DNA of 64,000 bases, from IMG/VR virus record IMGVR_UViG_3300034117_002447, positions 62,001 through 126,000 of that record. One strand, 5' to 3'. Shown piece by piece: positions 189-55,359 of the stretch. Below the pieces are notes generated by a model that saw only the letters and a program-made list of their open reading frames with translations, was not told where the DNA came from and searched no databases. Each line of letters opens with the position of its first letter. Positions within the stretch are counted from its first letter, which is position 1. Both the position numbers and the translations under genes were made by a program.

Positions 189-309
189 TAGTCAGGACAG
201 GATTCGAACCTGCATGGTCACATCTCTTACCTTTGTTTTCCCCGCTAAGGGAGTGGTGAACGAAGCGAGTTCCGCACCACATAGCGTCTACCAATTCCGC
301 CACCTGACT
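189..309 (-). ncRNA. tRNA-like RNA (AGTCAGG family, copy 1): Leu-type D arm and T arm with a non-canonical ~70-nt core
   Basis: Acceptor stem AGTCAGG/CCTGACT, D arm GCGGAATTGGTAGACGC, T arm GCAGG-TTCGAAT-CCTGT; no canonical anticodon arm. Confidence 0.75.
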
Positions 310-574: not shown

Positions 575-603
575 ATTATACCCAATAACTATTAATAATT
601 TCC
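575..603 (-). promoter_or_regulatory. Phage promoter GGAAA(C/T)-N16-GTATAAT
   Basis: GGAAAT-16 nt-GTATAAT upstream of tRNA-Leu; same spacing at four other sites. Confidence 0.6.
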
Positions 604-634: not shown

Positions 635-1177
635 TTAGAATGGGCTGATTAACTCTTTAAACGGGGTTCCCAATTGATCTTTATCCGAAATGATAGGATT
701 TTCAATTTCCCAATCAATCGCTAAGTCCGCATCATTCCATAATATACAGCCTTCATGTTCTTTTGAATAACCGTTTGTGCATTTATAGGAAAAAATAGTG
801 TCGTCTTCTAGGCTAACGAAGCCATGCGCAAAGCCTGGTGGAATCCAAAGTTGATTGCGATCAGTCGTATTTAATACAACTTGAAAGGATTTACCGTAGC
901 TTGGAGAGTCTCGACGAATATCTACCGCAACATCCAACACGCTTCCTGTAATTACCTGAACCAATTTTCCTTGATCAAACGGTGGAGCTTGAAAATGCAA
1001 TCCACGAAGGACTCCTTTTTTGGATCTAGATAAATTATCCTGAACAAATGAATGCTCATTAAGAAATTCAGAATATTTCAGCTGATTAAACGATTCTAGA
1101 AAAAATCCTCTTTCATCGCCAAACACGGATGGATAAACTGATATAAGCCCGTTAGGAAATTCTTGTACAACTTTCAT
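635..1177 (-). CDS. rfbC: dTDP-4-dehydrorhamnose 3,5-epimerase
   Basis: DERGFFLESF, QDNLSRSKKGVLRGLHFQ and PPGFAHGF motifs. Confidence 0.95.
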   Translation of the reverse strand: MKVVQEFPNGLISVYPSVFGDERGFFLESFNQLKYSEFLNEHSFVQDNLSRSKKGVLRGLHFQAPPFDQGKLVQVITGSVLDVAVDIRRDSPSYGKSFQVVLNTTDRNQLWIPPGFAHGFVSLEDDTIFSYKCTNGYSKEHEGCILWNDADLAIDWEIENPIISDKDQLGTPFKELISPF

Positions 1178-1198: not shown

Positions 1199-1672
1199 TT
1201 ACATTACCGTGTGAGGTATCTGAACTCTCACGCAGTTTTGAGGTTCTCCCTCATTCATGAAGAAGTTATTAATGTAACCCATCATGTTCGCTGATCCAAT
1301 TGGATTCGCTGAGTGTACGTAGACTGCTGGAAACCGAATCGGCACATTACGCTTATCGAAACGACTCATCTCAATTCTCTTTGGATTCTCGTCGTAGAAC
1401 TGATTCACCAACCACTTAGTGCAATCCATTCCAGTTTTTTCAGTAATGTTCGTGTAGTCTAGCTTATAGTTAGGACTTACATTCGTGAAGTACTCTGACA
1501 TAGCTGAGTCACCCAAGTCGTGATCCAATGAGATCATGTGAATGTTCTTTAATCCAATTTCCATCACCTTGTCCTTGAACTCCTGGTATGATCTAACAAC
1601 TATCCAGTCCTGTTCAATTGGTGTTCGAACGTCATCTAAATAGATTCTGATCGGTAATTTTTCTTCTTCCAT
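1199..1672 (-). CDS. Cyclic-phosphate-processing receiver-domain protein
   Basis: YLDDVR...ISLDHDLG...TGMDC...VHSANPIG pattern; next to an RNA ligase. Confidence 0.75.
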   Translation of the reverse strand: MEEEKLPIRIYLDDVRTPIEQDWIVVRSYQEFKDKVMEIGLKNIHMISLDHDLGDSAMSEYFTNVSPNYKLDYTNITEKTGMDCTKWLVNQFYDENPKRIEMSRFDKRNVPIRFPAVYVHSANPIGSANMMGYINNFFMNEGEPQNCVRVQIPHTVM

Positions 1673-1686
1673 TTGTATTTGTTTTA

Positions 1687-2889
1687 TTAATGTGAGTCTC
1701 CAATATCGTGCTTTTCTCCGTAAATCAAATAGTCTGGATTAATTACCTTTGCTACTCGATTACGCTCACCGCTTATGTGCTTAATAACAATGCCTTCATG
1801 CGGCACCTTAGTTCCTTTGATCATATTACCAAAGACGAACTGGTCTTGTGTCTCTTGTGACCACGGTCCTGTGTATAGGACTCCAACGTGAGGTAACTCT
1901 AGCGCTTCTTTGAAAAGGAATTCAGTGTAAATAGTGGACTCGTATTTGCCGTTTACTGTGGCATCGAATCCAACGAATTCAATATCAGTCAGACCGTACT
2001 CGTAATTCTTTTGAATACCTGCACCGTAAATTTCTCCGTAAATTACAATACCAGCTCCAAGTTCACCAATCCTATTTTTAGTTTTTGCTAAGGTAAGCAA
2101 CCTGTTCTTGATATCGTACTTCTCGGCAATTGTTCTCCAGACATCAGTTGAATAGAACCCTTGAGAATCAGAACCCTTCTCGACATTATGAGATCCATAA
2201 ACGTACTCGTACTCAAAGAGCTCTCCGGCGAATCCAAAGAATTTTTTAATCCTATCCATGAAGGACAAGCGATTCTTCTTAACTATACCGTATCGTGCAT
2301 TCGTACCGTGGATCTTACGCGTGATTTGCACAATATCCTCTTCAGTAAACATTCCACTAACATTTTTCAAGTTAGGAAACTTGTAGTAGACATGAAAGTT
2401 TGGATTGTCTTGATAACGAACCTTTTTACCTGAAGCAAGTTGGACCTGTCTAACTGGCGGTTCGTACTTGAAAATTCCAAGCATCTCACTAACGTCAACT
2501 CCTTCTTCAATAACGAGTGCATCGTCATAAGGGCCCAACTGTAATTGATCGCCCCAAGGCTGTTTACTAACTCCGATCTTCATTTCTTCTGAACCTTCAA
2601 GCACATTAAGCGGAATGATTAGACACTCACTGTAAACTCCTCTCAACTTAACTGTTCTAACTCGATTGCCCTTACGCAGGTAACCGGTTACTCCCAATTT
2701 TTCGGATAACTCTTCCGGAATAACTGCATCAGTTGTTGCAATGATAACAAATTCGTCCGCCTTGTGTAGTCCTTTTTTAGTAATACAATTCCATCCACCG
2801 ATGATCGCTAACTCAATATTGTCAGCTCCTTCGATTGCCTTGATTTCTGTTACTTTTCCAATGTAACATACGCTGTTTTGATTTTCCAT
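1687..2889 (-). CDS. RNA ligase, DRB0094 family (N-terminal OB fold + ATP-dependent ligase)
   Basis: IEGADNIELA N-terminus, VKLRGVYSE, motif I KIHGTN, YGEIYG, EGIVIK. Confidence 0.9.
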   Translation of the reverse strand: MENQNSVCYIGKVTEIKAIEGADNIELAIIGGWNCITKKGLHKADEFVIIATTDAVIPEELSEKLGVTGYLRKGNRVRTVKLRGVYSECLIIPLNVLEGSEEMKIGVSKQPWGDQLQLGPYDDALVIEEGVDVSEMLGIFKYEPPVRQVQLASGKKVRYQDNPNFHVYYKFPNLKNVSGMFTEEDIVQITRKIHGTNARYGIVKKNRLSFMDRIKKFFGFAGELFEYEYVYGSHNVEKGSDSQGFYSTDVWRTIAEKYDIKNRLLTLAKTKNRIGELGAGIVIYGEIYGAGIQKNYEYGLTDIEFVGFDATVNGKYESTIYTEFLFKEALELPHVGVLYTGPWSQETQDQFVFGNMIKGTKVPHEGIVIKHISGERNRVAKVINPDYLIYGEKHDIGDSH

Positions 2890-2908
2890 TATATTAATTT
2901 TTTTATTT

Positions 2909-3463
2909 TCAGTCTTCGAATAATTTACTTAAGTATACAAACATATTGGCATACTCATGAAGATATTTTTCTTCAGCCGTCCAGCCTAATTGCTGCATGA
3001 ATTCGGGATTTTCTTTTCTGTACATCTCGAACATTCTGCTGCCAGACATTTTTGAGTACTGCACGTTTGCAATTCGGTCGCATAACTTAACGAATATCGC
3101 ATACGGCGTTGTTCTGATTCCATCGTAGTATCGGTAGTTAGCCCGATCATTACGACTCTTGCCTTTCTCGTTTGAGCACGCATAGACAATATCTGCTGCC
3201 ATTTCTCCAAGCGCCTGCTTAACATCATTGTATGAAACTCTGGTGTCTTCAATAAGATCATGGCCCCATGCTCCAAGTAGTACATGCTCAAAATCTTTCT
3301 CATACGTAATTAAAGATTGAAATTTCTTTGCAACTTCAACGACCATACGTAAATGAAATTCATAAGGCAAGTACTTATCGTACATGTGATTCGTGTCTCT
3401 ATGTTGGTCTAGAACCCAGTTTATTTTTGCTTCCATTATTCTTCCATTTATTGTTGCTTCCAT
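2909..3463 (-). CDS. HD-domain hydrolase, RelA/SpoT (Mesh1/SAH-like) type
   Basis: PYEFHL, HDLIEDT and VKLCDRIAN motifs. Confidence 0.8.
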   Translation of the reverse strand: MEATINGRIMEAKINWVLDQHRDTNHMYDKYLPYEFHLRMVVEVAKKFQSLITYEKDFEHVLLGAWGHDLIEDTRVSYNDVKQALGEMAADIVYACSNEKGKSRNDRANYRYYDGIRTTPYAIFVKLCDRIANVQYSKMSGSRMFEMYRKENPEFMQQLGWTAEEKYLHEYANMFVYLSKLFED

Positions 3464-4200
3464 TATTCTTCCATTGTTGGTTTTAACCAGATTTGTGTTC
3501 TAAAAATGTATTCCATAAGGAAAGGGTACTCTGATAACTTAAGTATCGTTGCATGAGTGTCATGTTTGAAACACTTAAAGAGCTCTTCCCTGATTCTCTC
3601 AGCTGATACTACACACATCTTAACTTCGTAATCGTAGTGCTTTATTACTTGAGACATTTCCTCAGGGATAGTAAATCCTTTAGTGATTGAAAATCTAATA
3701 GCTCTCAAGATTCTCAAAGGATCATCGTGAAACGTTTCCTCGCAAGGTAATGGCGTTACTAATAGCCCAAGCTTCAAGTGAGTCAGCCCATCAAAGTAGT
3801 CAATGATCGAGCCGTCCGCTTCTCTTGCCAGGGCATTAAGAGTAAAGTCTCTTCTCTGTAAATCGTCGAATAGGGTTCCAGGCTTAATGATCGGAGTTCT
3901 GGTAAACGGCACGTATCCAGTCTCTTTTCTAGACATTACAAAATCAGCAACTCCTTGGTACTTATGTCCGTCTGGAAATTTTGCTCTGATTGTGTAACAT
4001 TCTTTGGTGATCAGGAATATCTGGAATTTTTCACGAGTTAAGTAGTCAACTAGCAAGTCAAACATATCAGCCGCCTCAGGAAATTCCTCAAGCAGAGTTG
4101 CTTTCGGCACGGCTACGTAATCAACGTCTTTGGACTGAAGTCCCAAGATCTCGTCTCTTACCTTTCCGCCTACTTCGTAAAATTCAAATGGTGCTGTCAT
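3463..4200 (-). CDS. cca: tRNA nucleotidyltransferase (CCA-adding/poly(A) polymerase family)
   Basis: VGGKVRD, DVDYV, DLQRRDFTLNAL, DDPLRILRAIRF, SAERIREE. Confidence 0.9.
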   Translation of the reverse strand: MTAPFEFYEVGGKVRDEILGLQSKDVDYVAVPKATLLEEFPEAADMFDLLVDYLTREKFQIFLITKECYTIRAKFPDGHKYQGVADFVMSRKETGYVPFTRTPIIKPGTLFDDLQRRDFTLNALAREADGSIIDYFDGLTHLKLGLLVTPLPCEETFHDDPLRILRAIRFSITKGFTIPEEMSQVIKHYDYEVKMCVVSAERIREELFKCFKHDTHATILKLSEYPFLMEYIFRTQIWLKPTMEE

Positions 4201-4230
4201 GTTATTTCTTTTTACTATTATACCAAAATA

Positions 4231-4262
4231 AAAAAGTCTCTAGACAAATCTAGAGACTTTTT
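4231..4262. terminator. Intrinsic terminator (bidirectional-looking)
   Basis: AAAAAGTCTCTAGA-CAAA-TCTAGAGACTTTTT. Confidence 0.8.
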
Positions 4263-4281
4263 GTCTTAAATTTATTAAAAA

Positions 4282-5715
4282 TTATTCTGCGCCTGGTGTA
4301 AGCTTGTTAAGCATAGCCAGTAAGCCTTTACCTTCAGGTGTCTGTTTCAATGATTCAAGAAGCCCGTTAATCTGTGAACCTCCTTTAGCTGTGAATAGGT
4401 CGCTTAACTTGCCAATTCCTGAGTGTACGTCTCCACTATTTACCAATAGTTTCAAGTCAGCTCCAGCCATTGCTTTTGCCATCGATTCGTATTGTGCAAC
4501 TCCGACTACTTGAGTTACTTCAACTTCTCTAATTTTGATCAAGTATTCTTGGTAAGATTTGTTTTCGCCAATCTCTTTTGCTAGGGTTGTTTGGGCAGTT
4601 ACTCCAGCAAGCTCCATTGCTTTCTTGGATTCAGCCTGCGATATACCCTTTGCTTTAATAATATCTGCTTCTGCTTGGCCCAGAGTTTTAACACCTTCTG
4701 CATTTTTGATCTGTGCTTCAAGTGTAGCAGAAGCCTCAGTCTCAATTCTAAATTTATTAGCCTCTGCGTCAATTTCAGTTTTGCGTTTTTGTTGCTCAGC
4801 TGCAATAATTGCCTTTTCCTTATCAATTTCAGCCTGCTTAATCTCATTAACTTTAACGACCTCCATTTGCTGTTCAGCAGTAGCTCGTTCAGCTTGAGCG
4901 ATATCTGATATTGACTCTTGTTCTGCAATACCTGCCTTTTTTGTAGCCTCTGCTTTGGCAATACCGATTGCCTGTATTGATTGAGCTTGCGCCTCTCCTG
5001 CAATTTTCTGAGTTTCTGCTTTAGTTACATCAATTTCTTGTTGAGCAGTTAGTTCCGCCTGCTCTGCCAATTTAGTGTTTTTAGCAACTTCAGTTCTGGA
5101 TTCCATATCAATCGCAGACATTCGCTTAGCCATAATCTGGTGAATAACGCTCGAACCGTCAGTATCTCTAACATCCATTAACTCGATATTTTTAATAGGC
5201 TCAACTCCCCAATTAGATAAATCAACTTTAACACTTTCAGTAAATTTTTCGCCAAAGATAGATCGTTCTTCCATAATTTCCTCCAATTTAGACTTTGCTA
5301 AAATAGAACGAACTGCTCCTTGAACTACATTTTCCAGCTGCTTTTTCAACTCGTCAAATGATTCTACTTTCTCGGCAGCTTTATTTGTATCAGCAATGTG
5401 GAAGAATGCCTTAACGTCAACTACGAAAGGGACACGGTCCTTATCATACGCTGAATATTTAGCTAAGTCAATATCAAAGTTAGATACTGGCAATGATCTG
5501 ACCATAACTCCGATTTTAGGTAACCACTTCGGCCACTCATAATAAACGTTAGAGCCTTTACCTACGCCATAGGAAACAGTTTTGTCTCCTCGTTGAACGA
5601 TGTGGACTACGTTAGTTGGCACGATTCGACGTAGAGATAGTGCATAAAAAAATACGATTACCCCTATTAAGGCCGGTAGTCCGTACATAAGTGATGATGT
5701 GATGATTTCTGTCAT
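4282..5715 (-). CDS. SPFH/flotillin (band 7) membrane protein
   Basis: N-terminal TM helix, SPFH region, long AE-rich coiled coil. Confidence 0.85.
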   Translation of the reverse strand: MTEIITSSLMYGLPALIGVIVFFYALSLRRIVPTNVVHIVQRGDKTVSYGVGKGSNVYYEWPKWLPKIGVMVRSLPVSNFDIDLAKYSAYDKDRVPFVVDVKAFFHIADTNKAAEKVESFDELKKQLENVVQGAVRSILAKSKLEEIMEERSIFGEKFTESVKVDLSNWGVEPIKNIELMDVRDTDGSSVIHQIMAKRMSAIDMESRTEVAKNTKLAEQAELTAQQEIDVTKAETQKIAGEAQAQSIQAIGIAKAEATKKAGIAEQESISDIAQAERATAEQQMEVVKVNEIKQAEIDKEKAIIAAEQQKRKTEIDAEANKFRIETEASATLEAQIKNAEGVKTLGQAEADIIKAKGISQAESKKAMELAGVTAQTTLAKEIGENKSYQEYLIKIREVEVTQVVGVAQYESMAKAMAGADLKLLVNSGDVHSGIGKLSDLFTAKGGSQINGLLESLKQTPEGKGLLAMLNKLTPGAE

Positions 5716-5789
5716 TTTTTTTTGTTTTTATTAATTATTAAAATATAGAGATTACATTAGCCCGATTAGCTAACTACTTTGTTATTATA

Positions 5790-6176
5790 CTAAATTTCCA
5801 TACCAATTGATTTCCAATATTCAGGCCCTCCGTAATACGAGCACAATTCGTCTCCTGGATTAATATCGACTAGTGCAAAGAACGTAAAACAATTCTTTTC
5901 AGTATCATGTCTCCAATTTATATTTGGAGTTTCACTGTGATTGTAGATTCCTCCGAATCCAAGAAGAACGCCATACTCTACGCAGCCTAATTTCTCAGAA
6001 CGGCCGACTATGAATCGATAATCATTAAAAATAGGATCATCTGATGTCGCATCGAATGTTATGAAATGACATTCTTCAATAATCTCGCCTGGGCTAATAG
6101 ATTGCGTTGCGAATACTCCAAGTCCGTGTATTGGACTGGATGCGACTACTAGTTTAGAGGGTCCCGTTAATTCCAT
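5790..6176 (-). CDS. SET-domain protein (putative methyltransferase)
   Basis: SPIHGLGVFA, NHSETPN, DINPGDELCSYY. Confidence 0.9.
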   Translation of the reverse strand: MELTGPSKLVVASSPIHGLGVFATQSISPGEIIEECHFITFDATSDDPIFNDYRFIVGRSEKLGCVEYGVLLGFGGIYNHSETPNINWRHDTEKNCFTFFALVDINPGDELCSYYGGPEYWKSIGMEI

Positions 6177-6613
6177 TATTGGCTCCTCTTTGTGTACCAG
6201 TCAACAAAAGAAACGCAACAGTCCCATGCAGCAATTCGCTTAACATCTCCAGAATAATCATCTAAGAAGTCTTCATCGATAATTAGGTCAGTCGCTTCAA
6301 ATCTTCGATCCTTGTCGTACTTAATAATTTGAATTCCTCTACGGTGAATGCTGACGCAGAAACCAAGACTCTCGATCTTTTCGATTACTGGAAAAATCCA
6401 GCTCCATGAGGTTTCATATCTAAATATTCCAAGTGCAGCCAATTCCTGATCGTGACTGGGAATTCCAGAGAGTCCACCCCATTTTTCAAAGACGCCTTTG
6501 CCGTTTGAGCCGTGTGGCATTTCGTAGGTTTCACTAGAGACAATTGTGCCTCCCATGAATTGCGCAAGGAGTCGATTACCCTCGCCGATTTTATTGTGTG
6601 TATTCTGTATCAT
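6176..6613 (-). CDS. Hypothetical phage protein
   Basis: Translationally coupled ORF; SWSWIFPVIEKIE motif. Confidence 0.6.
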   Translation of the reverse strand: MIQNTHNKIGEGNRLLAQFMGGTIVSSETYEMPHGSNGKGVFEKWGGLSGIPSHDQELAALGIFRYETSWSWIFPVIEKIESLGFCVSIHRRGIQIIKYDKDRRFEATDLIIDEDFLDDYSGDVKRIAAWDCCVSFVDWYTKRSQ

Positions 6614-7278
6614 CTTCCTTCGTTTGTTTCATGGTGATCGTTCGGTAAAACCAAACACTTAACTGGACGGTCTCTCATAATCTTTGCGATTTCTTGAAGA
6701 GAATATGGGTCCATGAAGTTGCCGTCCATGCCAACGTCCATTGCTTTACCTGCATGTAATTTATTGTGTGGGCCTAAGTGAACGTGACCATGTAATTGAA
6801 TTACTCCACGGTTCATATCGTGCCAACTTGCGATTGGGTAATGACATAGCACAAACGTTTTCTTAATAGTCTTCGCTGGATTTATTTCGTTCGGCACGTT
6901 TGGAACAGTAAGTTCCAGTCTAACGTAATGATTCACTGATGCAAATAGAGCCTTGACTCCTCCCTTGTCATTCTCGATGTGCTGGTCGTGATTACCTAGA
7001 ACCAAATGAATGTTCTTACAGAGCAACCTGTCTCTGAACTCCTGGATGTTATCAAATCCTCCGAACGACCAGTCTCCTAAGTGGAAAAGAATATCGTCTT
7101 CGCTGACTAGGTGATTGATATTGTTAACAATCGTATCATTCATTTTATCCAGGGTATCGAAATCTCTGGTCTTACTCTCGGCCGGCCAATTAGACGTTCC
7201 TCTACAAATATTTGAGTGTTTGTAGTGAGTATCTGACGTGAACCATATTCGCTGATGAGGCTGTAATGTAATTTTCAT
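6610..7278 (-). CDS. Calcineurin-like metallophosphoesterase
   Basis: SDTH, HLGD, GNHD, HGHVH. Confidence 0.9.
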   Translation of the reverse strand: MKITLQPHQRIWFTSDTHYKHSNICRGTSNWPAESKTRDFDTLDKMNDTIVNNINHLVSEDDILFHLGDWSFGGFDNIQEFRDRLLCKNIHLVLGNHDQHIENDKGGVKALFASVNHYVRLELTVPNVPNEINPAKTIKKTFVLCHYPIASWHDMNRGVIQLHGHVHLGPHNKLHAGKAMDVGMDGNFMDPYSLQEIAKIMRDRPVKCLVLPNDHHETNEGR

Positions 7279-7293: not shown

Positions 7294-7320
7294 AAAAAGG
7301 AACCTAGTCGGTTCCTTTTT
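7294..7320. terminator. Intrinsic terminator
   Basis: AAAAAGGAACC-TAGTC-GGTTCCTTTTT. Confidence 0.7.
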
Positions 7321-7647: not shown

Positions 7648-8577
7648 CTAAAATAAGTTAAATTGTTTTACGAAATCTGCGCTAACTGTGTAGTCAGAGT
7701 ACTCGTCAGCTTTAATATCCTGTACTGAATTTGTACAGTAAACTTTTTCGAAGTATGCAGAAAGATCAAATAATCCTGAACTGAAAATTCCATGGGTCGC
7801 TATCAAGTATATTTTCGAATCTTGAGTTCTCTCCTTGATTGCTTTTGCTAATTCAATTGAAGTTCCAGCACTATCGCAAATATCGTCCACGATAACGAAT
7901 TTCTTGCCGTACTCATGCACTAATGGTTTTAAGGAAATATCGGTGTGAGTGATTTTACTGGTTTTTGGATCTCTGTGCTTTACCGCAGTCACCACCTCAT
8001 TTAAGTCAAACCAGTCAGCGACTTTGTAAATTTTCCTTAGAGCACCTGCGTCTGGAGAAACAAGAACAATATTCTCTCTTGCCTGATTCGTGTTATCAAT
8101 ATCAGTAAGCGCGTACTTAACGAGTAAGTAATTAGATACTTTTTGGAAATTATTGAGACAGGCTTCCAATACATCAGAGTGAGGATCCAGAACCTGCACA
8201 GATTCAAATTTCTGAGAATTAATGATTGGGCAAATAACGGTCTTTAGGTAATTTGAAGAACCTTCTGAGAATTTACGGTCACTACGTGCTCCCAAGAAAT
8301 AGGGAACATACAGGGAAACTGTCGCGACTCCACATTCGCGAAGAGCCTGATTTGCACAGATAATTAACTCAAGATCCTTGAAGTTATTTAGTCTAGATTT
8401 TATTACGACATCAGCTTCGTGTAGGTAACTTAAGTTTCCACGCATATCGCCAGTTAGAGTTAATGACTGTTGACCGTCAGCAAACTTTGAAACTTTGAAA
8501 TCAACGAATGCACTTCTTTCAAAGTGGTCTCGTCCTTCGTTTTCCGGATTTGCTAGATTAAGAGTTAGTAGTCTCAT
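7648..8577 (-). CDS. Ribose-phosphate pyrophosphokinase-like protein (phage Prs/Adps-like)
   Basis: PYFLGARSDR, DPHS, VSPDAGA, IVDDICDSAGT, THGIFS. Confidence 0.85.
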   Translation of the reverse strand: MRLLTLNLANPENEGRDHFERSAFVDFKVSKFADGQQSLTLTGDMRGNLSYLHEADVVIKSRLNNFKDLELIICANQALRECGVATVSLYVPYFLGARSDRKFSEGSSNYLKTVICPIINSQKFESVQVLDPHSDVLEACLNNFQKVSNYLLVKYALTDIDNTNQARENIVLVSPDAGALRKIYKVADWFDLNEVVTAVKHRDPKTSKITHTDISLKPLVHEYGKKFVIVDDICDSAGTSIELAKAIKERTQDSKIYLIATHGIFSSGLFDLSAYFEKVYCTNSVQDIKADEYSDYTVSADFVKQFNLF

Positions 8578-10871: not shown

Positions 10872-10875
10872 GATT

Positions 10876-11211: not shown

Positions 11212-11239
11212 AACTTTTATATGTTTAAGGTTTATATTA

Positions 11240-11443
11240 TTATACCAAAATTGGCACGCTATTGTTAATAAGTTTCCAATTGAGTCCGTCAAATCCTTCC
11301 AGCTTAAACTCACTTGGTATTTTAAAAATATTAATTACCTCATTAAGTTTCTCATACCACTTACAGAAGCACACACCAGTCATGCCAGTCAACGGACATG
11401 AGTAAGTAATCCTATACTCCAGAAAGGACTCGGTTTTTATCAT
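11240..11443 (-). CDS. Hypothetical protein
   Basis: Coupled ORF. Confidence 0.45.
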   Translation of the reverse strand: MIKTESFLEYRITYSCPLTGMTGVCFCKWYEKLNEVINIFKIPSEFKLEGFDGLNWKLINNSVPILV

Positions 11444-11856
11444 AATTTAATTTGGAAACGATCCCTCATTGCTTGTACCTTATCTGCTGGTACTCCATGC
11501 ACGTTCTCTCCACCATGACGGTTCTCAACGATTAGAGAAACTACTCGGTAATCGTATTGTTTTGCAAGATCGAAGTATGCCTGCATCTCCCACTCTTGGG
11601 TGAATGTGTTTGAGACAACAATCTCTGGGTAAAATTGTGGATTCACCAGACTGTCTTTCATTCTGGTCTCGACCTGGGATCTACACCATTCATGTGCATC
11701 CTTCAGTTTAGTAACATCAAATTCGTATGCACCAGTTTCCTTGTTGTGAAAATACTTGTCAGCTTCGCAAACGGCATACTCATTCCATATTGAATTGGCA
11801 ACAGTTGATTTACCTGCACCAGGAACTCCACGTAGGAGAATTAAGACTCTATTCAT
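11440..11856 (-). CDS. P-loop kinase, AAA_33/polynucleotide-kinase-like
   Basis: LLRGVPGAGKST, VVSNTF, ENRHGGENVHGVP. Confidence 0.8.
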   Translation of the reverse strand: MNRVLILLRGVPGAGKSTVANSIWNEYAVCEADKYFHNKETGAYEFDVTKLKDAHEWCRSQVETRMKDSLVNPQFYPEIVVSNTFTQEWEMQAYFDLAKQYDYRVVSLIVENRHGGENVHGVPADKVQAMRDRFQIKL

Positions 11857-14362: not shown

Positions 14363-14446
14363 TTGTTTTAAATTAAGATACACTATTACTATACTATTAA
14401 AAATCGATTTAGGTTTAATCGGATGATAAAAAATCTAAAAAATTTG

Positions 14447-14520
14447 TGGACCATTCAGGGCTCGAACCTGAGACCTTCGCATTATGAGTGCGCTGCTCTA
14501 ACCAACTGAGCTAAAGGTCC
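14447..14520 (-). tRNA. tRNA-Ile2(CAT, lysidine type); Met not excluded
   Basis: GGACCTTTAGCTCAGTTGGTTAGAGC start typical of Ile2; loop CTCATAA. Confidence 0.8.
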
Positions 14521-14571
14521 TGGTGGAGGGATTATTTTTTTAGAGTAGAATTCGCCCACCTCAAAACTACT

Positions 14572-14658
14572 TGGTGCCGCAGGTAGGATTCGAACCTACT
14601 CAGCCTTACGACAACAGATTTACAGTCTGTCCTGACTCTCCAACTTCAGCGCTACGGC
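14572..14658 (-). tRNA. tRNA-Tyr(GTA)
   Basis: ACAGA-CTGTAAA-TCTGT; long variable arm; CCA. Confidence 0.9.
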
Positions 14659-14796
14659 AGGTAAGGAAATGAGAAGATGGTTCAGTGGACATCTCATTTT
14701 ACGATTAGCATTACTCTGGTGAATGCCTGCAAACTCCGATTATGTCAGTCAGCATTCACTCTCGAACTATTGACACAATCATTCCCTAATCAACCT

Positions 14797-14871
14797 TGGC
14801 TGGGTGTCCAGGATTCGAACCTGGGACCACTCGATTAACAGTCGAGAGCTCTACCGCTGAGCTAACACCCA
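14797..14871 (-). tRNA. tRNA-Asn(GTT)
   Basis: CTCGA-CTGTTAA-TCGAG; CCA. Confidence 0.95.
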
Positions 14872-14878
14872 ATAAAAT

Positions 14879-14978
14879 AAAAGAACCTCGACCACCATTT
14901 CAGCGCAAGCGCGTGCTTTCAGCTAGGCTTGAACGTTACGTCCTAGCTGGTGGAGTCAGCCTCTACTAAGGTTCTTTT
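14879..14978 (-). ncRNA. Structured inter-tRNA RNA closed by a 10-bp stem
   Basis: AAAAGAACCT/AGGTTCTTTT ends; inner CAGCTAGG/CCTAGCTG. Confidence 0.5.
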
Positions 14979-14979
14979 G

Positions 14980-15056
14980 TCGAGATGGCAGGATTCGAAC
15001 CTGCGAGTTCTCCTGCTCCCAAAGCAGGCGGGGTAACCGGACTCCCCAACATCTCG
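14980..15056 (-). tRNA. tRNA-Pro(TGG)
   Basis: CCTGC-TTTGGGA-GCAGG. Confidence 0.95.
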
Positions 15057-15345
15057 ATAATTTGCTCCATACTGAGACTTGTACGAAGACTGGATTTTAA
15101 CGGGTTTCTCTGACTGTTTCGAGAACCATATCCCTTATTGACGTCTTAGACTATACGGTCCTCCCCCAATAAGTCTTTTTCATTAGTGTCTTACCACATA
15201 AAAACCTGTCAACTCTCTACGTCGGCGCGGCAGAGTCTTGCTCACGTTTACCCGAATCGATCCCCCATTAAGGTCGAGGACTTTTTCACTACCATCGCTT
15301 TTTTAAAGAATGCGACCAATCTTACTGAGTATCTCTTGCTCATAG

Positions 15346-15418
15346 TAGTCCCTGTAGGATTCGAACCTACGACCCTCTGCATGTAAAACAGATGCTCTAC
15401 CAACTGAGCTAAAGGACT
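15346..15418 (-). tRNA. tRNA-Val(TAC)
   Basis: TCTGT-TTTACAT-GCAGA. Confidence 0.95.
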
Positions 15419-15499
15419 GTTTGATACGCTTTCGCCCCCTGTATGACGTATCACCGATGTTTGAGGTCGGCCTCGAACCATTAAGGGAGCCACCGGTCG

Positions 15500-15572
15500 A
15501 GCGGATGGCGAGAATCGAACTCGCATCTCCAGCTTGGAAGGCTGGAGTAATAAGCCATTATACGACATCCGC
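15500..15572 (-). tRNA. tRNA-Gly(TCC)
   Basis: CCAGC-CTTCCAA-GCTGG; U73. Confidence 0.95.
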
Positions 15573-15575
15573 TTA

Positions 15576-15651
15576 TGGAGCGGGAGGCCGGGTTCGAACC
15601 GGCGACCTCAACCTTGGCAAGGTTGCGCTCTACCAACTGAGCTACTCCCGC
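15576..15651 (-). tRNA. tRNA-Gly(GCC)
   Basis: CAACC-TTGCCAA-GGTTG; CCA. Confidence 0.97.
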
Positions 15652-15830
15652 AAGTGGGTGGGATCAGACGCGTTCTGCCCACCGGGACCTCGTCGTTAGA
15701 AAGTCTTGCGACTAACCAGAGCGTACCGAGACACTATCTAACTTCGACTTGAGGTAGTCACGGCCGCCTCTGATCCTCTCAAGTCTATTTCGTATCGTGG
15801 CAAAATGCGGCACGACCCTAATACGATGTG

Positions 15831-15904
15831 AGCCTCCTGACGGATTCGAACCGCCGACATCCTCATTACAAGTGAGGCGCTCTGGCCAACTGAGCTAAGG
15901 AGGC
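15831..15904 (-). tRNA. tRNA-Thr(TGT)
   Basis: CCTCA-CTTGTAA-TGAGG. Confidence 0.95.
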
Positions 15905-15909
15905 AATGT

Positions 15910-15986
15910 TGGTGGACCGTGAGAGACTCGAACTCTCGACCCCCGCAGTGCAAGTGCGGTGCTCTAGCCAACTGAGCTAACAGCCC
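15910..15986 (-). tRNA. tRNA-Ala(TGC)
   Basis: CCGCA-CTTGCAC-TGCGG; G3:U70; CCA. Confidence 0.97.
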
Positions 15987-15990
15987 ATTT

Positions 15991-16130
15991 AAGAACAACG
16001 TTGGAGTACCCGTCTCGCTCCAATCTTAACAGCTTCATCAGAGTTTTCTCTGGGCCCAGGCTGAGGGTGGTGAACTCTTGATCCGACCGTGATTGTCGAC
16101 ATCACATTGGCCGGAGAGACCGTTGTTCTT
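15991..16130 (-). ncRNA. Structured inter-tRNA RNA with possible pseudoknot
   Basis: Perfect 10-bp closing stem AAGAACAACG/CGTTGTTCTT and three inner hairpins. Confidence 0.55.
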
Positions 16131-16132
16131 AG

Positions 16133-16204
16133 TAGCCCGTACGAGAATCGAACTCGTCTCTCACCCGTGAAAGGGGCGTGTCCTAACCGATAGACTAACG
16201 GGCC
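16133..16204 (-). tRNA. tRNA-Glu(TTC)
   Basis: CGCCC-CTTTCAC-GGGTG. Confidence 0.95.
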
Positions 16205-16209
16205 AAATA

Positions 16210-16391
16210 AAAGTATACCGTGCTCCGGTTTTTACTTATGGTTTGTTCCCCATAACCTGATACTGTGCACAGTAGAGCAGGGACCTGAACAGAGTACCTT
16301 GGGTCATTTATATCTCTCCGGTTGGGTAGCTAATCCCATGGAGCCAAGGTTCCTTTCATCCGTGCAAGTCGGACTTCTGTTGATATACTTT
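16210..16391 (-). ncRNA. Multibranch structured inter-tRNA RNA
   Basis: Closing stem AAAGTATA/TATACTTT with at least six nested helices. Confidence 0.55.
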
Positions 16392-16393
16392 CG

Positions 16394-16465
16394 CGGTCCC
16401 ACCGGGAATCGAACCCGGCATACCGCCGTGACAGGGCGGCGTTATAGCCGATTAACTACAGGACC
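16394..16465 (-). tRNA. tRNA-Asp(GTC)
   Basis: CCGCC-CTGTCAC-GGCGG; G73. Confidence 0.95.
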
Positions 16466-16574
16466 ATTTCTCTCCAGTTCACTCCTACCCTGTGGGTATA
16501 CCGTGACGGGTTGTTTATCCATGCAAATCTACCTGAAGAGCGATTGGTTTGCGCTCGACGTGCATGGATCCGGG

Positions 16575-16680
16575 TGATTAGAGCCGGACTCGAACCGGAT
16601 ACCGTGCAAGACGGAGTAGACAACCTTACCTCTTTCGAGTTCGGGACTTGGGTACCATCCCGCATTACGCCCATCTAATC
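16575..16680 (-). ncRNA. tRNA-like RNA (GATTAGA acceptor) with non-canonical core
   Basis: 7-bp acceptor GATTAGA/TCTAATC, T arm CCGG-TTCGAGT-CCGG; core has other hairpins and no standard D or anticodon arm. Confidence 0.65.
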
Positions 16681-16685
16681 ATTAG

Positions 16686-16757
<72 letters not shown>

Positions 16758-16762
16758 ATATG

Positions 16763-16833
16763 TTGTCCCGCAAGGATTCGAACCTCGATCTTCTGGACCA
16801 AAACCAGACGTGCTGCCATTACACCACAGGACA
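16763..16833 (-). tRNA. tRNA-Gln(TTG)
   Basis: TCTGG-TTTTGGT-CCAGA; U1:A72. Confidence 0.95.
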
Positions 16834-16930
16834 ATTTTCAATCTCCAATAAGTCAAAGAACTCTTGTTAAACTTATATGATTACTATACCACATTAGGTT
16901 TAATTTAGTCACTTTCTTTCGAAAGATTTG

Positions 16931-17001
16931 CACGGTCGGAGAGATTCGAACTCCCATCTAGGGTTTTGGAGACCCGCATGCTACCATTGCACCACATCCG
17001 T
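16931..17001 (-). tRNA. tRNA-Trp(CCA)
   Basis: Loop CTCCAAA; G73; one acceptor mismatch. Confidence 0.9.
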
Positions 17002-17010
17002 GTATTCTTT

Positions 17011-17088
17011 TGGTTGCGGGACCCGGACTCGAACCGGGAACTTCAGCTTATGAGACTGACGAGATAACCGCTTTCTACGCATCCCGCA
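17011..17088 (-). tRNA. tRNA-Met(CAT)
   Basis: TCAGT-CTCATAA-GCTGA; CCA; irregular D arm. Confidence 0.85.
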
Positions 17089-17093
17089 ATGTT

Positions 17094-17170
17094 TGGTTGG
17101 AATAATAGGAATCGAACCTATAACCTTTCGCGTATCAGGCGAATGCTCTAACCAATTGAGCTATATTCCA
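17094..17170 (-). tRNA. tRNA-Ile(GAT)
   Basis: TTCGC-CTGATAC-GCGAA; CCA. Confidence 0.95.
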
Positions 17171-17176
17171 GTTTAG

Positions 17177-17250
17177 TGTCCCCGACAGGACTCGAACCTG
17201 TGACTCCCTCATTAAAAGTGAGGTGCTCTAACCAACTGAGCTACGAAGAC
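17177..17250 (-). tRNA. tRNA-Lys(TTT)
   Basis: CCTCA-CTTTTAA-TGAGG. Confidence 0.95.
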
Positions 17251-17290
17251 CTGTGTATTTAGACCTGTAACTCTGGGAGTCACTGGGCCT

Positions 17291-17320
17291 TTAGCGTTTA
17301 CGTTTCATATTCTTATTCAT
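17291..17320 (-). CDS. Candidate micro-ORF MNKNMKRKR inside the tRNA array
   Basis: A-rich upstream tract, ATG...TAA, immediately followed by a hairpin. Confidence 0.35.
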   Translation of the reverse strand: MNKNMKRKR

Positions 17321-17328
17321 TTTTTTGT

Positions 17329-17404
17329 TGGTGGTGAGGGGCGGGATCGAACCGCCGACACCAGGATTTTCAGTCCTGTGCTCTACCATCTGAGCTACCT
17401 CACC
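17329..17404 (-). tRNA. tRNA-Phe(GAA), first gene of the array
   Basis: CAGGA-CTGAAAA-TCCTG; CCA. Confidence 0.97.
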
Positions 17405-17621: not shown

Positions 17622-17665
17622 GTTATTTATCTAGTTATTATACCAACTTTTTAAAAAAGGTTTCC
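17622..17665 (-). promoter_or_regulatory. Tandem promoters of the leader/tRNA operon
   Basis: GGAAAC-N16-GTATAAT (17665-17637) plus GATAAATAAC (17631-17622). Confidence 0.65.
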
Positions 17666-55225: not shown

Positions 55226-55359
55226 TGTTCCTGTTTTTAAAAGTTATATTTTTATGATGCACAATTATTATACTTTTATGTTTTTCTATTATACCTAAAA
55301 AAGACTTGTAAAACCCGGCCTTTGCAGGGTAGGGAAACTCCGTCTACCTGTTTTTTGCG

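What the first reader, a model, noticed from the sequence alone, without database searches (positions are those of the whole stretch)
1199..7278. tRNA repair and stress-reversal module matching the tRNA arrays
SEEN: adjacent genes for a CCA-adding enzyme, SpoT-type HD hydrolase, DRB0094-family RNA ligase and cyclic-phosphate receiver protein. A metallophosphoesterase lies at 6610 and a Pnk-like kinase at 11440. Eleven of the 20 tRNA genes lack encoded CCA. KNOWN: T4 Pnkp/Rnl1 repair PrrC-cut tRNA, and small alarmone hydrolases remove (p)ppGpp or toxSAS-added pyrophosphate. INFERRED: heal, seal, re-tail and de-block functions that complement tRNA replacement.
Basis: partly seen in the sequence, partly recalled or inferred. 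Interest (0 to 1): 0.6.

Follow-up and report, generated by a model that had tools for sequence, protein, structure and literature searches.

The report
Jumbo-phage tRNA repair and re-tailing genes
A 270-kb uncultivated lake phage with its own full tRNA set also carries genes predicted to mend broken RNA ends, rebuild the CCA tail of tRNAs and strip blocking pyrophosphates; this kind of kit is already described for giant phages, so it is a well-formed example, not a new system.

Summary
Every gene call and the tRNA count hold. On the minus strand, 4200 to 1199, is a tight four-gene unit. It has a 245-aa head-and-neck-only CCA-adding enzyme and a small-alarmone-hydrolase (SAH/SpoT-type) HD protein whose start overlaps the CCA stop (TAATG). 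An Rnl5 (DRB0094/NgrRnl)-type RNA ligase and a cREC protein follow. A hairpin and a GGTATAAT motif precede the unit. A metallophosphoesterase (6610-7278) and a Pnk-fold kinase (11440-11856) lie apart here, but in relatives they sit beside HD, ligase and cREC. Eleven of the 20 window tRNAs lack an encoded CCA (16 of 26 genome-wide).

Most likely this is an RNA-end heal, seal and re-tail island. The CCA enzyme is probably needed first to mature the phage's own CCA-less tRNAs. The HD protein's substrate, alarmones or pyrophosphorylated tRNA ends, is unresolved.

The island is loose. HD touches CCA in 8 of 47 HD lineages, and 29 of 37 CCA lineages have no HD within 6 kb.

cRec-ligase linkage, CCA enzymes and alarmone HD hydrolases are already published for jumbo phages, so this is a new member of a known kind. 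Nothing here is biochemically tested.

In passing: a widespread tRNA-like RNA family with hypervariable inserts, four copies in the window.

The parts
3463..4200 (-). Minimal class II CCA-adding enzyme, 245 aa, head and neck only with no body or tail domains. First gene of the four-gene unit.
   Evidence: PF01743 at 6e-15 and PF12627. phrog_24229 at 3.5e-53. NCBIfam CCA models match only the N-terminal half of ~400-aa profiles. PDB CCA and poly(A) enzymes match. GGxVRD, DxD (D25, D27), RRD and DDPLR motifs are invariant in 11 homologues.
2909..3463 (-). Single-domain RelA/SpoT-type HD hydrolase (small alarmone hydrolase, nearest PaSAH). Its ATG shares one base with the CCA gene's TAA stop (TAATG).
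   Evidence: all 14 profile hits in the PDB are RSH hydrolases; TM 0.76-0.78 to 6z3n/6yvc; H37, H68-D69, E72-D73, D129, N133 invariant in 35 homologues; hhalign 93% to the Salmonella phage SSU5 phosphohydrolase taken to be PaSpo; overlap.
1687..2889 (-). ATP-dependent RNA ligase of the Rnl5 (DRB0094/NgrRnl) architecture: N-terminal OB domain plus nucleotidyltransferase domain. K192 is the predicted adenylylation lysine.
   Evidence: phrog_968 at 7.6e-59; K192, E237, G285-E286, E365-G366, K381 invariant. It is the only RNA ligase in the genome, and there is no RtcB.
1199..1672 (-). cREC (cyclic-phosphate-processing receiver-like) protein, a predicted 2',3'-cyclic phosphodiesterase. Last gene of the unit.
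   Evidence: PF20274 at 2.3e-20. LDD(V/I)R (D13, D14), SxDHDLxD (D50, H51, D52, D55) and HSAN are invariant in 12 homologues. Lies directly after the ligase, the linkage published in PMC7824862.
4201..4281 (-). Intergenic region upstream of the CCA gene. Holds a 14-bp terminator-like hairpin (4231-4262) ending the SPFH gene, then TTTTGGTATAAT (4217-4224), a promoter-like extended -10 motif.
   Evidence: GGTATAAT occurs 7 times in the window, all on the minus strand, against 2.4 expected. Other copies precede tRNA-Leu (575) and the tRNA array (17637).
6610..7278 (-). Calcineurin-like metallophosphoesterase, a candidate 3'-phosphate / cyclic-phosphate end-healing enzyme. Sits in a separate transcription unit here.
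   Evidence: PF00149, phrog_547. DxH, GD, GNHD and GHxH motifs are visible in the translation. Immediately upstream of CCA in L043/L047, and clustered with kinase, cREC, HD and ligase in L007-L009, L042 and L079.
11440..11856 (-). 138-aa P-loop kinase with a polynucleotide-kinase fold and no fused phosphatase. Candidate 5'-OH RNA kinase.
   Evidence: AAA_33 at 4.3e-11, phrog_2071 and phrog_505, TIGR04075 bacterial Pnkp weak. P-loop, FExD and ENRH...VP...RF invariant. Fold nearest CthPnkp and T4 Pnk kinase domains. Only AAA_33 gene in the genome. Contiguous with the phosphoesterase, cREC, HD and ligase in relatives.
4282..5715 (-). Membrane-anchored SPFH/Band-7 (flotillin-like) protein directly upstream of the unit. 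Possible accessory or scaffold; membership uncertain.
   Evidence: PF01145 at 5e-18, weak FloT match. Only Band_7 gene in the genome. A second Band_7 family lies within 4 genes of HD in 7 of 47 lineages. In SPFH-anchored loci, 7 of 10 non-identical ones hold a module family within 6 kb.
14446..17404 (-). Array of 18 tRNA genes, the presumed clients of the CCA enzyme. tRNA-Leu at 462-542 and tRNA-Ser at 20016-20103 complete the 20.
   Evidence: 11 of 20 lack an encoded CCA; 26 tRNAs covering all 20 amino acids plus a tmRNA in the 270-kb genome, 16 of 26 without CCA.
189..309 (-). tRNA-like RNA gene with a Leu-type D arm, intact acceptor and T arms, an insert in place of the anticodon arm and no encoded CCA. 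About 0.9 kb downstream of cREC and 150 nt after tRNA-Leu. A possible further CCA-enzyme client.
   Evidence: Sister copies lie at 51411-51512, 55360-55485 and 55560-55650.

Best explanation
The region is the RNA-end repair and tRNA 3'-end maintenance island of an uncultivated freshwater jumbo phage (270 kb, 26 tRNAs plus a tmRNA).

Shown computationally:
- A four-gene unit, probably one operon, encodes a minimal CCA-adding enzyme, an SAH-type HD hydrolase, an Rnl5-type ATP-dependent RNA ligase and a cREC protein.
- All four have intact catalytic residues.
- A metallophosphoesterase and a Pnk-fold kinase nearby cluster with these genes in relatives.

Inferred mechanism:
1. The CCA enzyme adds CCA to the 16 phage tRNAs (and the tRNA-like RNAs) that lack it. 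It also rebuilds tails that are trimmed or clipped.
2. The SAH removes a 3'-pyrophosphate, either from toxSAS-modified tRNA CCA ends or from (p)ppGpp/(p)ppApp. SAHs are known to do both.
3. RNAs cut by metal-independent host nucleases carry 2',3'-cyclic phosphate and 5'-OH ends. cREC and/or the metallophosphoesterase would open and remove the phosphate, and the kinase would phosphorylate the 5' end.
4. The Rnl5-type ligase, through adenylylated K192, then seals the 3'-OH/5'-phosphate break held in register by the tRNA fold.

Together with tRNA replacement, this would keep translation running against host tRNA-directed defences.
For: Gene identities and active sites.

Operon anatomy:
- 1-nt TAATG overlap between CCA and HD, and 14-19 nt spacers.
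- Hairpin and GGTATAAT upstream. The same motif precedes tRNA-Leu and the tRNA array.

Synteny:
- Among 47 HD lineages (clustered at 90% identity), the commonest neighbours within 4 genes are CCA (10, of which 8 directly adjacent, in both gene orders) and cREC (10), then the ligase (7).
- Kinase, phosphoesterase, cREC, HD and ligase are contiguous in L042 and L079, and near-contiguous in L007-L009.
- L043/L047 have phosphoesterase-CCA-HD...ligase-cREC with a ligase only 32% identical, which is family displacement within the same layout.

Need for CCA addition.

Single-copy status: one ligase and one kinase, no RtcB.

Literature:
- cRec-ligase operons, CCA enzymes and HD-alarmone hydrolases in jumbo phages: PMC7824862.
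- cREC in phage RNA-repair neighbourhoods: PMC9503650.
- SAHs restore pyrophosphorylated tRNA: bioRxiv 10.1101/2021.04.30.441581.
- Phage SSU5 PaSpo does so in vivo: PMC11559606. The window's HD family is homologous to an SSU5 phosphohydrolase that I take to be PaSpo.
Against: - No biochemistry exists for any protein of this phage.
- cREC activity is a prediction only.
- From my own knowledge, the characterised Rnl5 enzymes seal nicks in duplexes and have not been shown to repair anticodon loops.
- The ligase scores below NCBIfam's equivalog cut-off (94.8 against 151 bits).
- The linkage is facultative. 29 of 37 CCA lineages have no HD within 6 kb and only 14 of 37 have any other module member. 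37 of 47 HD lineages have no CCA within 4 genes.
- Related phages share ancestry, so these counts are not independent events.
- In this phage the phosphoesterase and kinase are 2.4 and 7.2 kb away, separated from the unit by unrelated genes and hairpins.
- RNA-library evidence is limited to a few short contigs at 95-99% identity, which does not show transcription.
- The host and its defences are unknown.
Confidence: 0.7

Rival explanations
1. Housekeeping, not repair. The CCA enzyme exists to mature the phage's own CCA-less tRNAs and tRNA-like RNAs. The neighbouring genes are unrelated accessory genes that happen to share an island.
For: 16 of 26 phage tRNAs and all four tRNA-like RNAs lack an encoded CCA. 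The same promoter-like motif precedes the tRNA genes and the CCA unit. Most CCA lineages carry no HD, ligase or cREC within 6 kb.
Against: The overlap with HD and the tight spacing to ligase and cREC argue for one transcription unit. CCA is the commonest direct neighbour of HD, in both gene orders. The host should already own a CCA enzyme if its tRNA genes lack CCA. Maturation and repair are the same chemistry, so this is more a question of emphasis than an exclusive rival.
Confidence: 0.3
2. The HD protein is an alarmone hydrolase. It degrades host (p)ppGpp or toxic (p)ppApp to keep nucleotide synthesis and transcription running during infection, and it has no tRNA substrate.
For: The closest solved relative is PaSAH, a (p)ppGpp/(p)ppApp hydrolase. 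PMC7824862 lists such jumbo-phage proteins as HD-alarmone phosphodiesterases. In relatives HD is frequently near a PRPP-synthetase-like gene, in 17 of 76 non-identical loci within 6 kb and directly adjacent in L056 and L077. That gene lies at 7648-8577 here.
Against: CCA is the top direct neighbour (8 of 47 lineages) and the two genes overlap here. The Arg-Lys pair that aligns with Mesh1 R24-K25 is His-Met here, and H26 is invariant in the family, so nucleotide recognition may differ (residue roles from my own knowledge). SAHs that act on alarmones also act on tRNA-PP, so the two roles need not exclude each other.
Confidence: 0.4
3. Signal clean-up rather than RNA repair. cREC, the phosphoesterase and HD degrade NAD-derived or cyclic-nucleotide immune signals such as ADPr cyclic phosphate. 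The ligase serves another nucleic-acid transaction.
For: cREC is also predicted to process 1''-2'' cyclic ADPr phosphate and is often fused to Nudix. A 2H/Acb1-like ORF elsewhere in the window (33005-33556) shows that the phage carries signal- or end-processing esterases.
Against: There is no Nudix, sirtuin, KptA or Macro partner in the unit. cREC sits directly after an RNA ligase, the context published for RNA repair. Kinase, phosphoesterase and ligase together are the domain set of bacterial Pnkp.
Confidence: 0.12
4. Chance co-location of unrelated accessory genes in a hypervariable region, with no functional coupling.
For: Gene order around HD is highly mosaic. SPFH, SET and the 145-aa ORF are found in this position only in near-identical copies.
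Against: All four proteins act on RNA or nucleotide 3' and 5' ends. The same families recur around HD and CCA at 52-80% identity, with a displaced ligase family keeping the same position before cREC.
Confidence: 0.06

Closest known systems
Jumbo-phage RNA-repair gene sets with cRec-RNA ligase operons (Iyer et al. 2021, PMC7824862; Burroughs and Aravind 2016, cited there)
   Same: Same parts list: ATP-dependent RNA ligase directly linked to cRec, polynucleotide kinase, calcineurin-like or HD phosphoesterases, a CCA-adding enzyme, many tRNAs, and an HD-alarmone hydrolase in the same phages.
   Different: That survey names Rnl1 and Rnl2 as the main ligase families, whereas this one is Rnl5-type. 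The translationally coupled pair of minimal CCA enzyme and SAH, and the adjacent Band-7 gene, are not mentioned in the passages read. No held paper contains 'alarmone hydrolase', 'tRNA nucleotidyltransferase' and 'phage' together.
Phage T4 Pnkp plus Rnl1 tRNA repair against the PrrC anticodon nuclease
   Same: The logic is shared: a 5' kinase, 3' end healing and an ATP-dependent ligase encoded by a phage that also carries tRNAs. The kinase fold matches T4 Pnk.
   Different: The kinase has no fused HAD phosphatase. Healing is assigned to separate cREC and metallophosphoesterase proteins. The ligase is Rnl5-type with an N-terminal OB domain, not Rnl1. The genes are spread over about 11 kb.
Bacterial Pnkp (Clostridium thermocellum Pnkp/Hen1 system)
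   Same: Kinase, binuclear metallophosphoesterase and ligase are the same three activities. The kinase model is closest to the CthPnkp kinase domain, and TIGR04075 gives a weak hit.
   Different: Here they are three separate genes rather than one polypeptide. No Hen1 methyltransferase was seen. The ligase domain family differs.
Rnl5 RNA ligases: Deinococcus DraRnl (DRB0094) and Naegleria NgrRnl
   Same: The N-terminal OB plus C-terminal nucleotidyltransferase architecture matches over the full length. The motif I lysine and motifs III, IV and V are conserved.
   Different: The protein is 400 aa against about 340, with an insert between the domains. It scores below the NCBIfam equivalog cut-off. 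Its substrate is unknown.
Small alarmone hydrolases: P. aeruginosa SAH (6yvc/6z3n), Mesh1, Salmonella phage SSU5 PaSpo
   Same: Single-domain RSH hydrolase fold and the full metal-binding and catalytic residue set. A phage SAH is shown to reverse tRNA CCA pyrophosphorylation.
   Different: Only 24-25% identical to PaSAH. The N-terminal nucleotide-binding motif is diverged. There is no partner toxSAS in the phage. It is coupled to a CCA-adding enzyme.
E. coli multifunctional Cca (nucleotidyltransferase fused to an HD phosphohydrolase domain)
   Same: A CCA-adding nucleotidyltransferase is paired with an HD-superfamily phosphohydrolase, here as two overlapping genes. NF008137 'multifunctional CCA addition/repair protein' matches the N-terminal half.
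   Different: The HD partner belongs to the RelA/SpoT hydrolase clade. All PDB profile hits are RSH enzymes, so it is not a detached Cca HD domain. The CCA enzyme lacks body and tail domains. This is an analogy, not orthology.

Membership tests
Rnl5 (DRB0094/NgrRnl) RNA ligase | N-terminal OB-fold domain followed by a C-terminal nucleotidyltransferase domain, matching over the full length | tested here: met
   PF21189 plus PF09414. TIGR02306 matches positions 6-339 of 341. Family profile against 5cot at E 5.5e-76, residues 5-337 of 340.
Rnl5 (DRB0094/NgrRnl) RNA ligase | Motif I lysine nucleophile and motifs III, IV and V | tested here: met
   K192, E237, G285-E286, E365-G366 and K381 are invariant in 9 homologues. 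The motif I column aligns with the KLDGSS motif of NgrRnl.
Rnl5 (DRB0094/NgrRnl) RNA ligase | Score above the curated equivalog cut-off of TIGR02306 | tested here: not met
   94.8 bits against a cut-off of 151.15. It is therefore a diverged relative, not a certified equivalog.
Rnl5 (DRB0094/NgrRnl) RNA ligase | ATP-dependent sealing of 3'-OH/5'-phosphate RNA nicks | not testable with these tools
   Needs an enzyme assay.
RelA/SpoT-type hydrolase, small alarmone hydrolase | HD fold of the RSH hydrolase clade as a stand-alone domain | tested here: met
   184 aa. Model pLDDT 93.4. Foldseek top hits are PaSAH at TM 0.76-0.78, then Mesh1, RelH and Rel. All 14 profile hits in the PDB are RSH hydrolases.
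RelA/SpoT-type hydrolase, small alarmone hydrolase | Metal ligands H...HD...D and the catalytic ED pair | tested here: met
   H37, H68-D69, E72-D73, D129 and N133 are invariant in 35 homologues and aligned to Mesh1 and PaSAH.
RelA/SpoT-type hydrolase, small alarmone hydrolase | Pfam or NCBIfam family score above the curated cut-off | tested here: not met
   Only PF01966 at 19.1 bits against 22. TIGR00691 at 21.4 bits against 499. Membership rests on the PDB sequence, profile and fold evidence.
toxSAS-SAH toxin-antitoxin pair | An adjacent RelA_SpoT synthetase (toxin) gene | tested here: not met
   No PF04607 match anywhere in the 270-kb genome. The neighbours are the CCA enzyme and the ligase.
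Class II CCA-adding enzyme | Head-domain catalytic motifs: GGxVRD, DxD, RRD and the (E/D)DxxR nucleotide-selection motif | tested here: met
   G11-G12, R15-D16, D25, D27, R116-R117-D118 and D159-D160...R163 are invariant in 11 homologues. PF01743 and PF12627 are above or at their cut-offs.
Class II CCA-adding enzyme | Body and tail domains that hold the tRNA elbow | tested here: not met
   The protein ends at residue 245. It matches only about positions 1-220 of the 360-470-position NCBIfam models. The whole phage family phrog_24229 is 245 positions long.
Class II CCA-adding enzyme | CCA rather than A-only, CC-only or poly(A) addition | not testable with these tools
   PcnB and A-adding models also match, more weakly. 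Specificity needs an assay.
cREC domain proteins | Match to PF20274 above the gathering score, with the acidic receiver-like pocket conserved | tested here: met
   73.5 bits against 27. D13, D14, D50, D52 and D55 are invariant.
cREC domain proteins | Operonic linkage to an RNA ligase and no histidine kinase partner | tested here: met
   The gene starts 14 nt after the ligase stop. The ligase-cREC order is kept in L007, L008, L010, L043 and L047.
T4-type Pnkp | P-loop polynucleotide kinase domain | tested here: met
   Fold closest to CthPnkp and T4 Pnk kinase domains, E 6.5e-6 to 1e-4, TMq 0.67-0.69, with a model pLDDT of 80.8. P-loop and FExD invariant.
T4-type Pnkp | Fused HAD-type 3'-phosphatase domain | tested here: not met
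   The protein is 138 aa and is a kinase domain only.
Band-7-associated RNA repair system (Burroughs and Aravind 2016, as cited in bioRxiv 10.1101/312249) | A Band-7 protein encoded next to an RNA ligase (RtcB in the description) together with a tRNA-like RNA | tested here: inconclusive
   The only Band_7 gene abuts the repair unit. Band_7 genes recur near HD in relatives. However there is no RtcB, a hairpin separates the genes, the nearest tRNA-like RNA is 4 kb away, and no tRNA is consistently adjacent in relatives.

The most novel reading that the evidence does not exclude
The head-and-neck-only CCA-adding enzyme and the PaSAH-like SAH are translationally coupled here and are direct neighbours, in either order, in about eight diverged lineages. 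They may form a dedicated two-enzyme tRNA 3'-end rescue unit. The SAH would strip toxSAS-added pyrophosphate, or other 3' blocks, and the CCA enzyme would rebuild tails clipped by tail-directed nucleases. That would be a phage counter-defence not yet described. It may also service the phage's CCA-less tRNA-like RNAs.
Probability: 0.25. Interest if true: 0.65.

Novelty: new member of a known kind. Interest (0 to 1): 0.38.

Why it matters
Hosts attack tRNAs in several ways: anticodon nucleases, acceptor-tail nucleases and toxSAS pyrophosphorylation. Phage answers beyond tRNA replacement and T4 Pnkp/Rnl1 are mostly predictions.

This locus offers a compact, intact and environmentally abundant set of candidate enzymes for testing those predictions. 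The set comprises cREC, an Rnl5-type ligase, a minimal CCA enzyme and a phage SAH. cREC has never been assayed, according to the papers read. The CCA-SAH pairing suggests a specific experiment on 3'-end de-blocking.

Tried and rejected
- **DNA search against deposited phages.** The 6-kb stretch gave no match by megablast. Only protein-level relatives exist. The nearest CCA enzyme, at 59%, is in an unannotated gut phage contig whose neighbours I did not analyse further.
- **HD as a detached Cca-type HD domain.** I considered that the HD protein might be the split-off HD domain of a multifunctional Cca. This is rejected, because every sequence, profile and fold hit is an RSH hydrolase.
- **CCA plus HD complex prediction.** The result was no verdict (score 0.02 against a mark of 0.32). 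It counts neither for nor against binding.
- **Kinase against the PDB by sequence.** Nothing at E 0.01. Only the fold search placed it.
- **cREC against the PDB.** No meaningful hit.
- **Expression.** Three metatranscriptome runs hold only 31-167-nt pieces at 95-99% identity. These probably come from related strains and are kept as contigs, so they show neither transcription nor operon structure.
- **Band-7-associated tRNA idea.** No tRNA is consistently next to SPFH genes in 15 related loci.
- **tRNA-like elements tied to the repair genes.** Only 9 of 80 element-bearing loci hold a module family, roughly what co-residence in large phage genomes would give. I do not claim a link.
- **NAD salvage partner for the PRPP-synthetase-like gene.** No NAPRTase-family gene in the genome.
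- **Burroughs and Aravind 2016.** The paper could not be read because it is not held. It is cited only through papers that quote it.
- **Not run.** The large protein searches (search for homologous proteins, the search of protein representatives) were not needed.

Full report
**Source.** The window is bases 174116-238115 of a 270,136-bp IMG/VR virus record that CheckV rates complete, so this is a jumbo phage. The stretch occurs near-identically in about twenty lake-water and freshwater metagenome runs from 2016 to 2024. Megablast finds no deposited phage that matches it. The genome carries 26 tRNA genes covering all 20 amino acids, plus a tmRNA. Twenty of the tRNAs are in the window.

**The observation.** All genes of interest are on the minus strand.

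| Gene | Coordinates | Main evidence |
|---|---|---|
| cREC | 1199-1672 | PF20274, E 2.3e-20 |
| RNA ligase | 1687-2889 | PF21189 OB domain plus PF09414; phrog_968; full-length but sub-threshold TIGR02306 match, 94.8 against 151 bits; family profile against Naegleria NgrRnl at E 5.5e-76 over the whole chain |
| HD protein | 2909-3463 | Only a weak generic HD Pfam hit; phmmer and a 35-sequence profile find only RelA/SpoT-type hydrolases in the PDB (Mesh1, PaSAH, RelH, Rel, SpoT); pLDDT-93 model superposes on PaSAH at TM 0.76-0.78 |
| CCA-adding enzyme | 3463-4200 | 245 aa; PF01743 plus PF12627; phrog_24229 |
| Metallophosphoesterase | 6610-7278 | PF00149; phrog_547 |
| Kinase | 11440-11856 | AAA_33 P-loop protein; model closest to the CthPnkp and T4 Pnk kinase domains |

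Nine of the 20 window tRNAs end in an encoded CCA and eleven do not. Genome-wide the figures are 10 with and 16 without.

**Catalytic residues.** These are conserved in alignments with relatives.
- Ligase: K192 (motif I), E237, G285-E286, E365-G366 and K381.
- HD protein: H37, H68-D69, E72-D73, D129 and N133.
- CCA enzyme: GGxVRD, D25/D27, RRD and DDPLR.
- cREC: D13-D14, D50, D52 and D55.
- Kinase: P-loop, FExD and the C-terminal R-rich lid.

- The CCA stop and the HD start share one base (TAATG).
- HD to ligase and ligase to cREC are 19 and 14 nt apart.
- Upstream of CCA, a 14-bp terminator-like hairpin (4231-4262) closes the preceding SPFH gene and is followed by TTTTGGTATAAT.
- GGTATAAT occurs seven times in the window, always on the minus strand, against 2.4 expected. 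Two of 100 shuffles reach 7. Other copies lie just upstream of tRNA-Leu, the tRNA array and a tRNA-like RNA.
- The four genes therefore look like one transcription unit, perhaps sharing a promoter class with the tRNA genes. This is suggestive, not proven.
- With a second hairpin at 7294-7320, these put the phosphoesterase in a different unit.

**HD-centred comparative evidence.** Eighty HD-centred loci from IMG/VR, at 52-100% identity, collapse to 47 lineages at 90% identity. Within four genes of HD the commonest families are as follows.

| Neighbour family | Lineages of 47 |
|---|---|
| CCA | 10 (8 directly adjacent, in both gene orders) |
| cREC | 10 |
| Unnamed family f11 | 8 |
| Ligase | 7 |
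| DUF6717 protein | 7 |
| A second Band_7 family | 7 |

- In L042 and L079 the phosphoesterase, kinase, cREC, HD and ligase are contiguous. L007-L009 are similar.
- L043 and L047 read phosphoesterase-CCA-HD...ligase-cREC with a ligase only 32% identical to the window's. The position is kept while the ligase family member is displaced.
- This supports counting the phosphoesterase and kinase as part of the set. It also shows that SPFH-SET-ORF145 is an insertion between phosphoesterase and CCA, seen only in near-identical copies.

**CCA-centred comparative evidence.** The linkage is facultative. Of 37 CCA-centred lineages, 8 have HD within 6 kb (4 adjacent), 7 have the ligase, and 14 have any module member. 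Relatives share ancestry, so these counts are not independent events.

**What else the genome has.** There is one RNA ligase, one AAA_33 kinase and one Band_7 gene. There is no RtcB and no RelA_SpoT synthetase, so the SAH is not the antitoxin of a phage-borne toxSAS. A weak 2H/Acb1-like esterase lies at 33005-33556.

**Mechanism.** The best-supported reading is an RNA-end heal, seal and re-tail island.
- The most secure inferred step is that the CCA enzyme must, or at least can, finish the 16 CCA-less phage tRNAs.
- The SAH belongs to a clade in which Mesh1 and ATfaRel restore FaRel2-pyrophosphorylated tRNA in vitro. The phage SSU5 enzyme PaSpo does so in vivo.
- The window's family aligns to the SSU5 gene annotated as a metal-dependent phosphohydrolase, which I take to be PaSpo, at hhalign probability 93%.
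- Its solved nearest neighbour is a (p)ppGpp/(p)ppApp hydrolase, and jumbo-phage homologues have been listed as alarmone phosphodiesterases.
- In relatives HD also often sits near a PRPP-synthetase-like gene. The substrate therefore remains open. I put alarmone-only at about 0.4. tRNA-end activity, alone or in addition, is at least as likely.
- Healing by cREC and/or the phosphoesterase, 5' phosphorylation by the kinase and sealing by the Rnl5-type ligase follow the published syntax. All of these steps are inference.
- One caution comes from my own knowledge. The characterised Rnl5 enzymes are duplex nick sealers, so a T4 Rnl1-like anticodon-loop role is not a given.

**Comparison with what is known.** Iyer et al. 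2021 already describe, for jumbo phages:
- cRec-RNA ligase operons;
- kinases and calcineurin-like or HD phosphatases congruent with ATP-dependent ligases;
- CCA-adding enzymes;
- HD-alarmone hydrolases;
- large tRNA complements.

This locus is a new member of that kind. What I did not find described is the coupled pair of minimal CCA enzyme and SAH. No held paper combines the three terms searched, but the library is limited, so this is weak evidence of novelty. The pair recalls E. coli Cca (nucleotidyltransferase plus HD domain) by analogy only, because the HD partner here is of the RSH clade. The Band-7 adjacency recalls the Band-7-associated RNA-repair systems quoted. That comparison is inconclusive here.

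**Things that led nowhere.**
- A structure-based test of CCA-HD binding gave no verdict.
- Metatranscriptome contigs are too short and too divergent to show expression.

**Side finding.** Rfam flags two tRNA-like elements that ARAGORN does not call. Two more were found by pattern search.
- All four are in the window on the minus strand, at 189-309, 51411-51512, 55360-55485 and 55560-55650.
- They share an identical or near-identical acceptor stem, a Leu-type D arm, a T arm and discriminator A. They lack an encoded CCA.
- In place of the anticodon arm they carry unrelated inserts. The two elements aligned by Rfam have 41 and 65 nt there; the four elements are 91-126 nt long overall.
- The exact 25-mer covering the T arm and 3' acceptor occurs in more than 120 IMG/VR contigs, with up to five copies in 5 kb. 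76 of the 97 matches in the 80 fetched loci are not callable tRNAs.
- Among 185,579 species genomes it occurs in only 14 MAG contigs, always as the same aberrant element and never as a normal tRNA. Five of the 14 are Bacteroidota or Chitinophagaceae bins.
- Orthologous copies keep their inserts.
- I found no specific linkage to the repair genes.
- Their conserved top half is what RNase P, the CCA enzyme and (from my own knowledge) LeuRS recognise, so they are plausible further clients of the CCA enzyme. T4's stable RNAs C and D are a remembered precedent. Their function is unknown and worth a study of its own.

**Verdict.** The locus is a new member of a known kind, with interest of about 0.38.

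Noticed in passing
window 189-309, 51411-51512, 55360-55485, 55560-55650 (all minus strand); also L098-L177 and L220-L233: A family of tRNA-like RNAs. The acceptor stem (AGUCAGG/CCUGACU), Leu-type D arm, T arm and discriminator A are invariant. There is no encoded CCA, and an unrelated insert (41 and 65 nt in the two Rfam-aligned window copies) replaces the anticodon arm. The 25-mer covering the T arm and 3' acceptor is exact in more than 120 IMG/VR contigs, with up to 5 copies in 5 kb. Among 185k species genomes it occurs in only 14 MAG contigs and never as a normal tRNA. Orthologous copies keep their inserts. Function unknown.
   Followed up: partly
window 4282-5715 (-); L014:4959-5912 and relatives; L085-L097: A flotillin-like SPFH/Band-7 protein with an N-terminal membrane helix. 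It is the only Band_7 gene in the genome and sits directly upstream of the repair unit. Band_7 genes of two families recur near the HD gene in relatives, and a divergent HD (31-36% identity) is directly adjacent in L092 and L093.
   Followed up: partly
window 7648-8577 (-): A ribose-phosphate pyrophosphokinase (PRPP synthetase)-like gene. It lies within 6 kb of the HD gene in 17 of 76 non-identical relatives' loci, and directly adjacent in L056 and L077. No NAPRTase-family partner is present in the genome. It could bear on an alarmone or nucleotide-supply role for the HD protein.
   Followed up: partly
window 575-582, 4217-4224, 11239-11246, 17637-17644, 41411-41418, 55288-55295, 55660-55667 (-): GGTATAAT, usually preceded by T-rich sequence, occurs 7 times, all on the minus strand, against 2.4 expected. 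It lies upstream of tRNA-Leu, the CCA unit, the tRNA array and a tRNA-like RNA. It is a candidate promoter class.
   Followed up: partly
window 33005-33556 (-): A 183-aa ORF with sub-threshold matches to the 2H phosphoesterase family (PF13563) and to anti-CBASS Acb1 (PF23474). It could be an RNA cyclic phosphodiesterase or an enzyme that degrades cyclic-nucleotide signals. It lies next to a 4HBT thioesterase gene and a topoisomerase IV/gyrase A-like gene.
   Followed up: partly
window 5790-6176 (-) and 6176-6613 (-): A 128-aa SET-domain protein (PF00856, 1.2e-12) and an adjacent 145-aa ORF with no family match. They are inserted between the phosphoesterase and the SPFH gene, and are found at this position only in near-identical genomes.
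   Followed up: no
window 635-1177 (-), 11858-12523 (-), 12553-13422 (-), 10356-10922 (-): Other accessory genes in the neighbourhood: an RmlC-like dTDP-4-dehydrorhamnose 3,5-epimerase right after cREC, a ClpP protease, a PA14/GLEYA-domain protein and an SLT lytic transglycosylase.
   Followed up: no
G000:C1:27247-27613 (outside the window): A phage-encoded tmRNA with a 24-residue tag ending in LAA, alongside six further tRNAs at G000:167766-168693.
   Followed up: no
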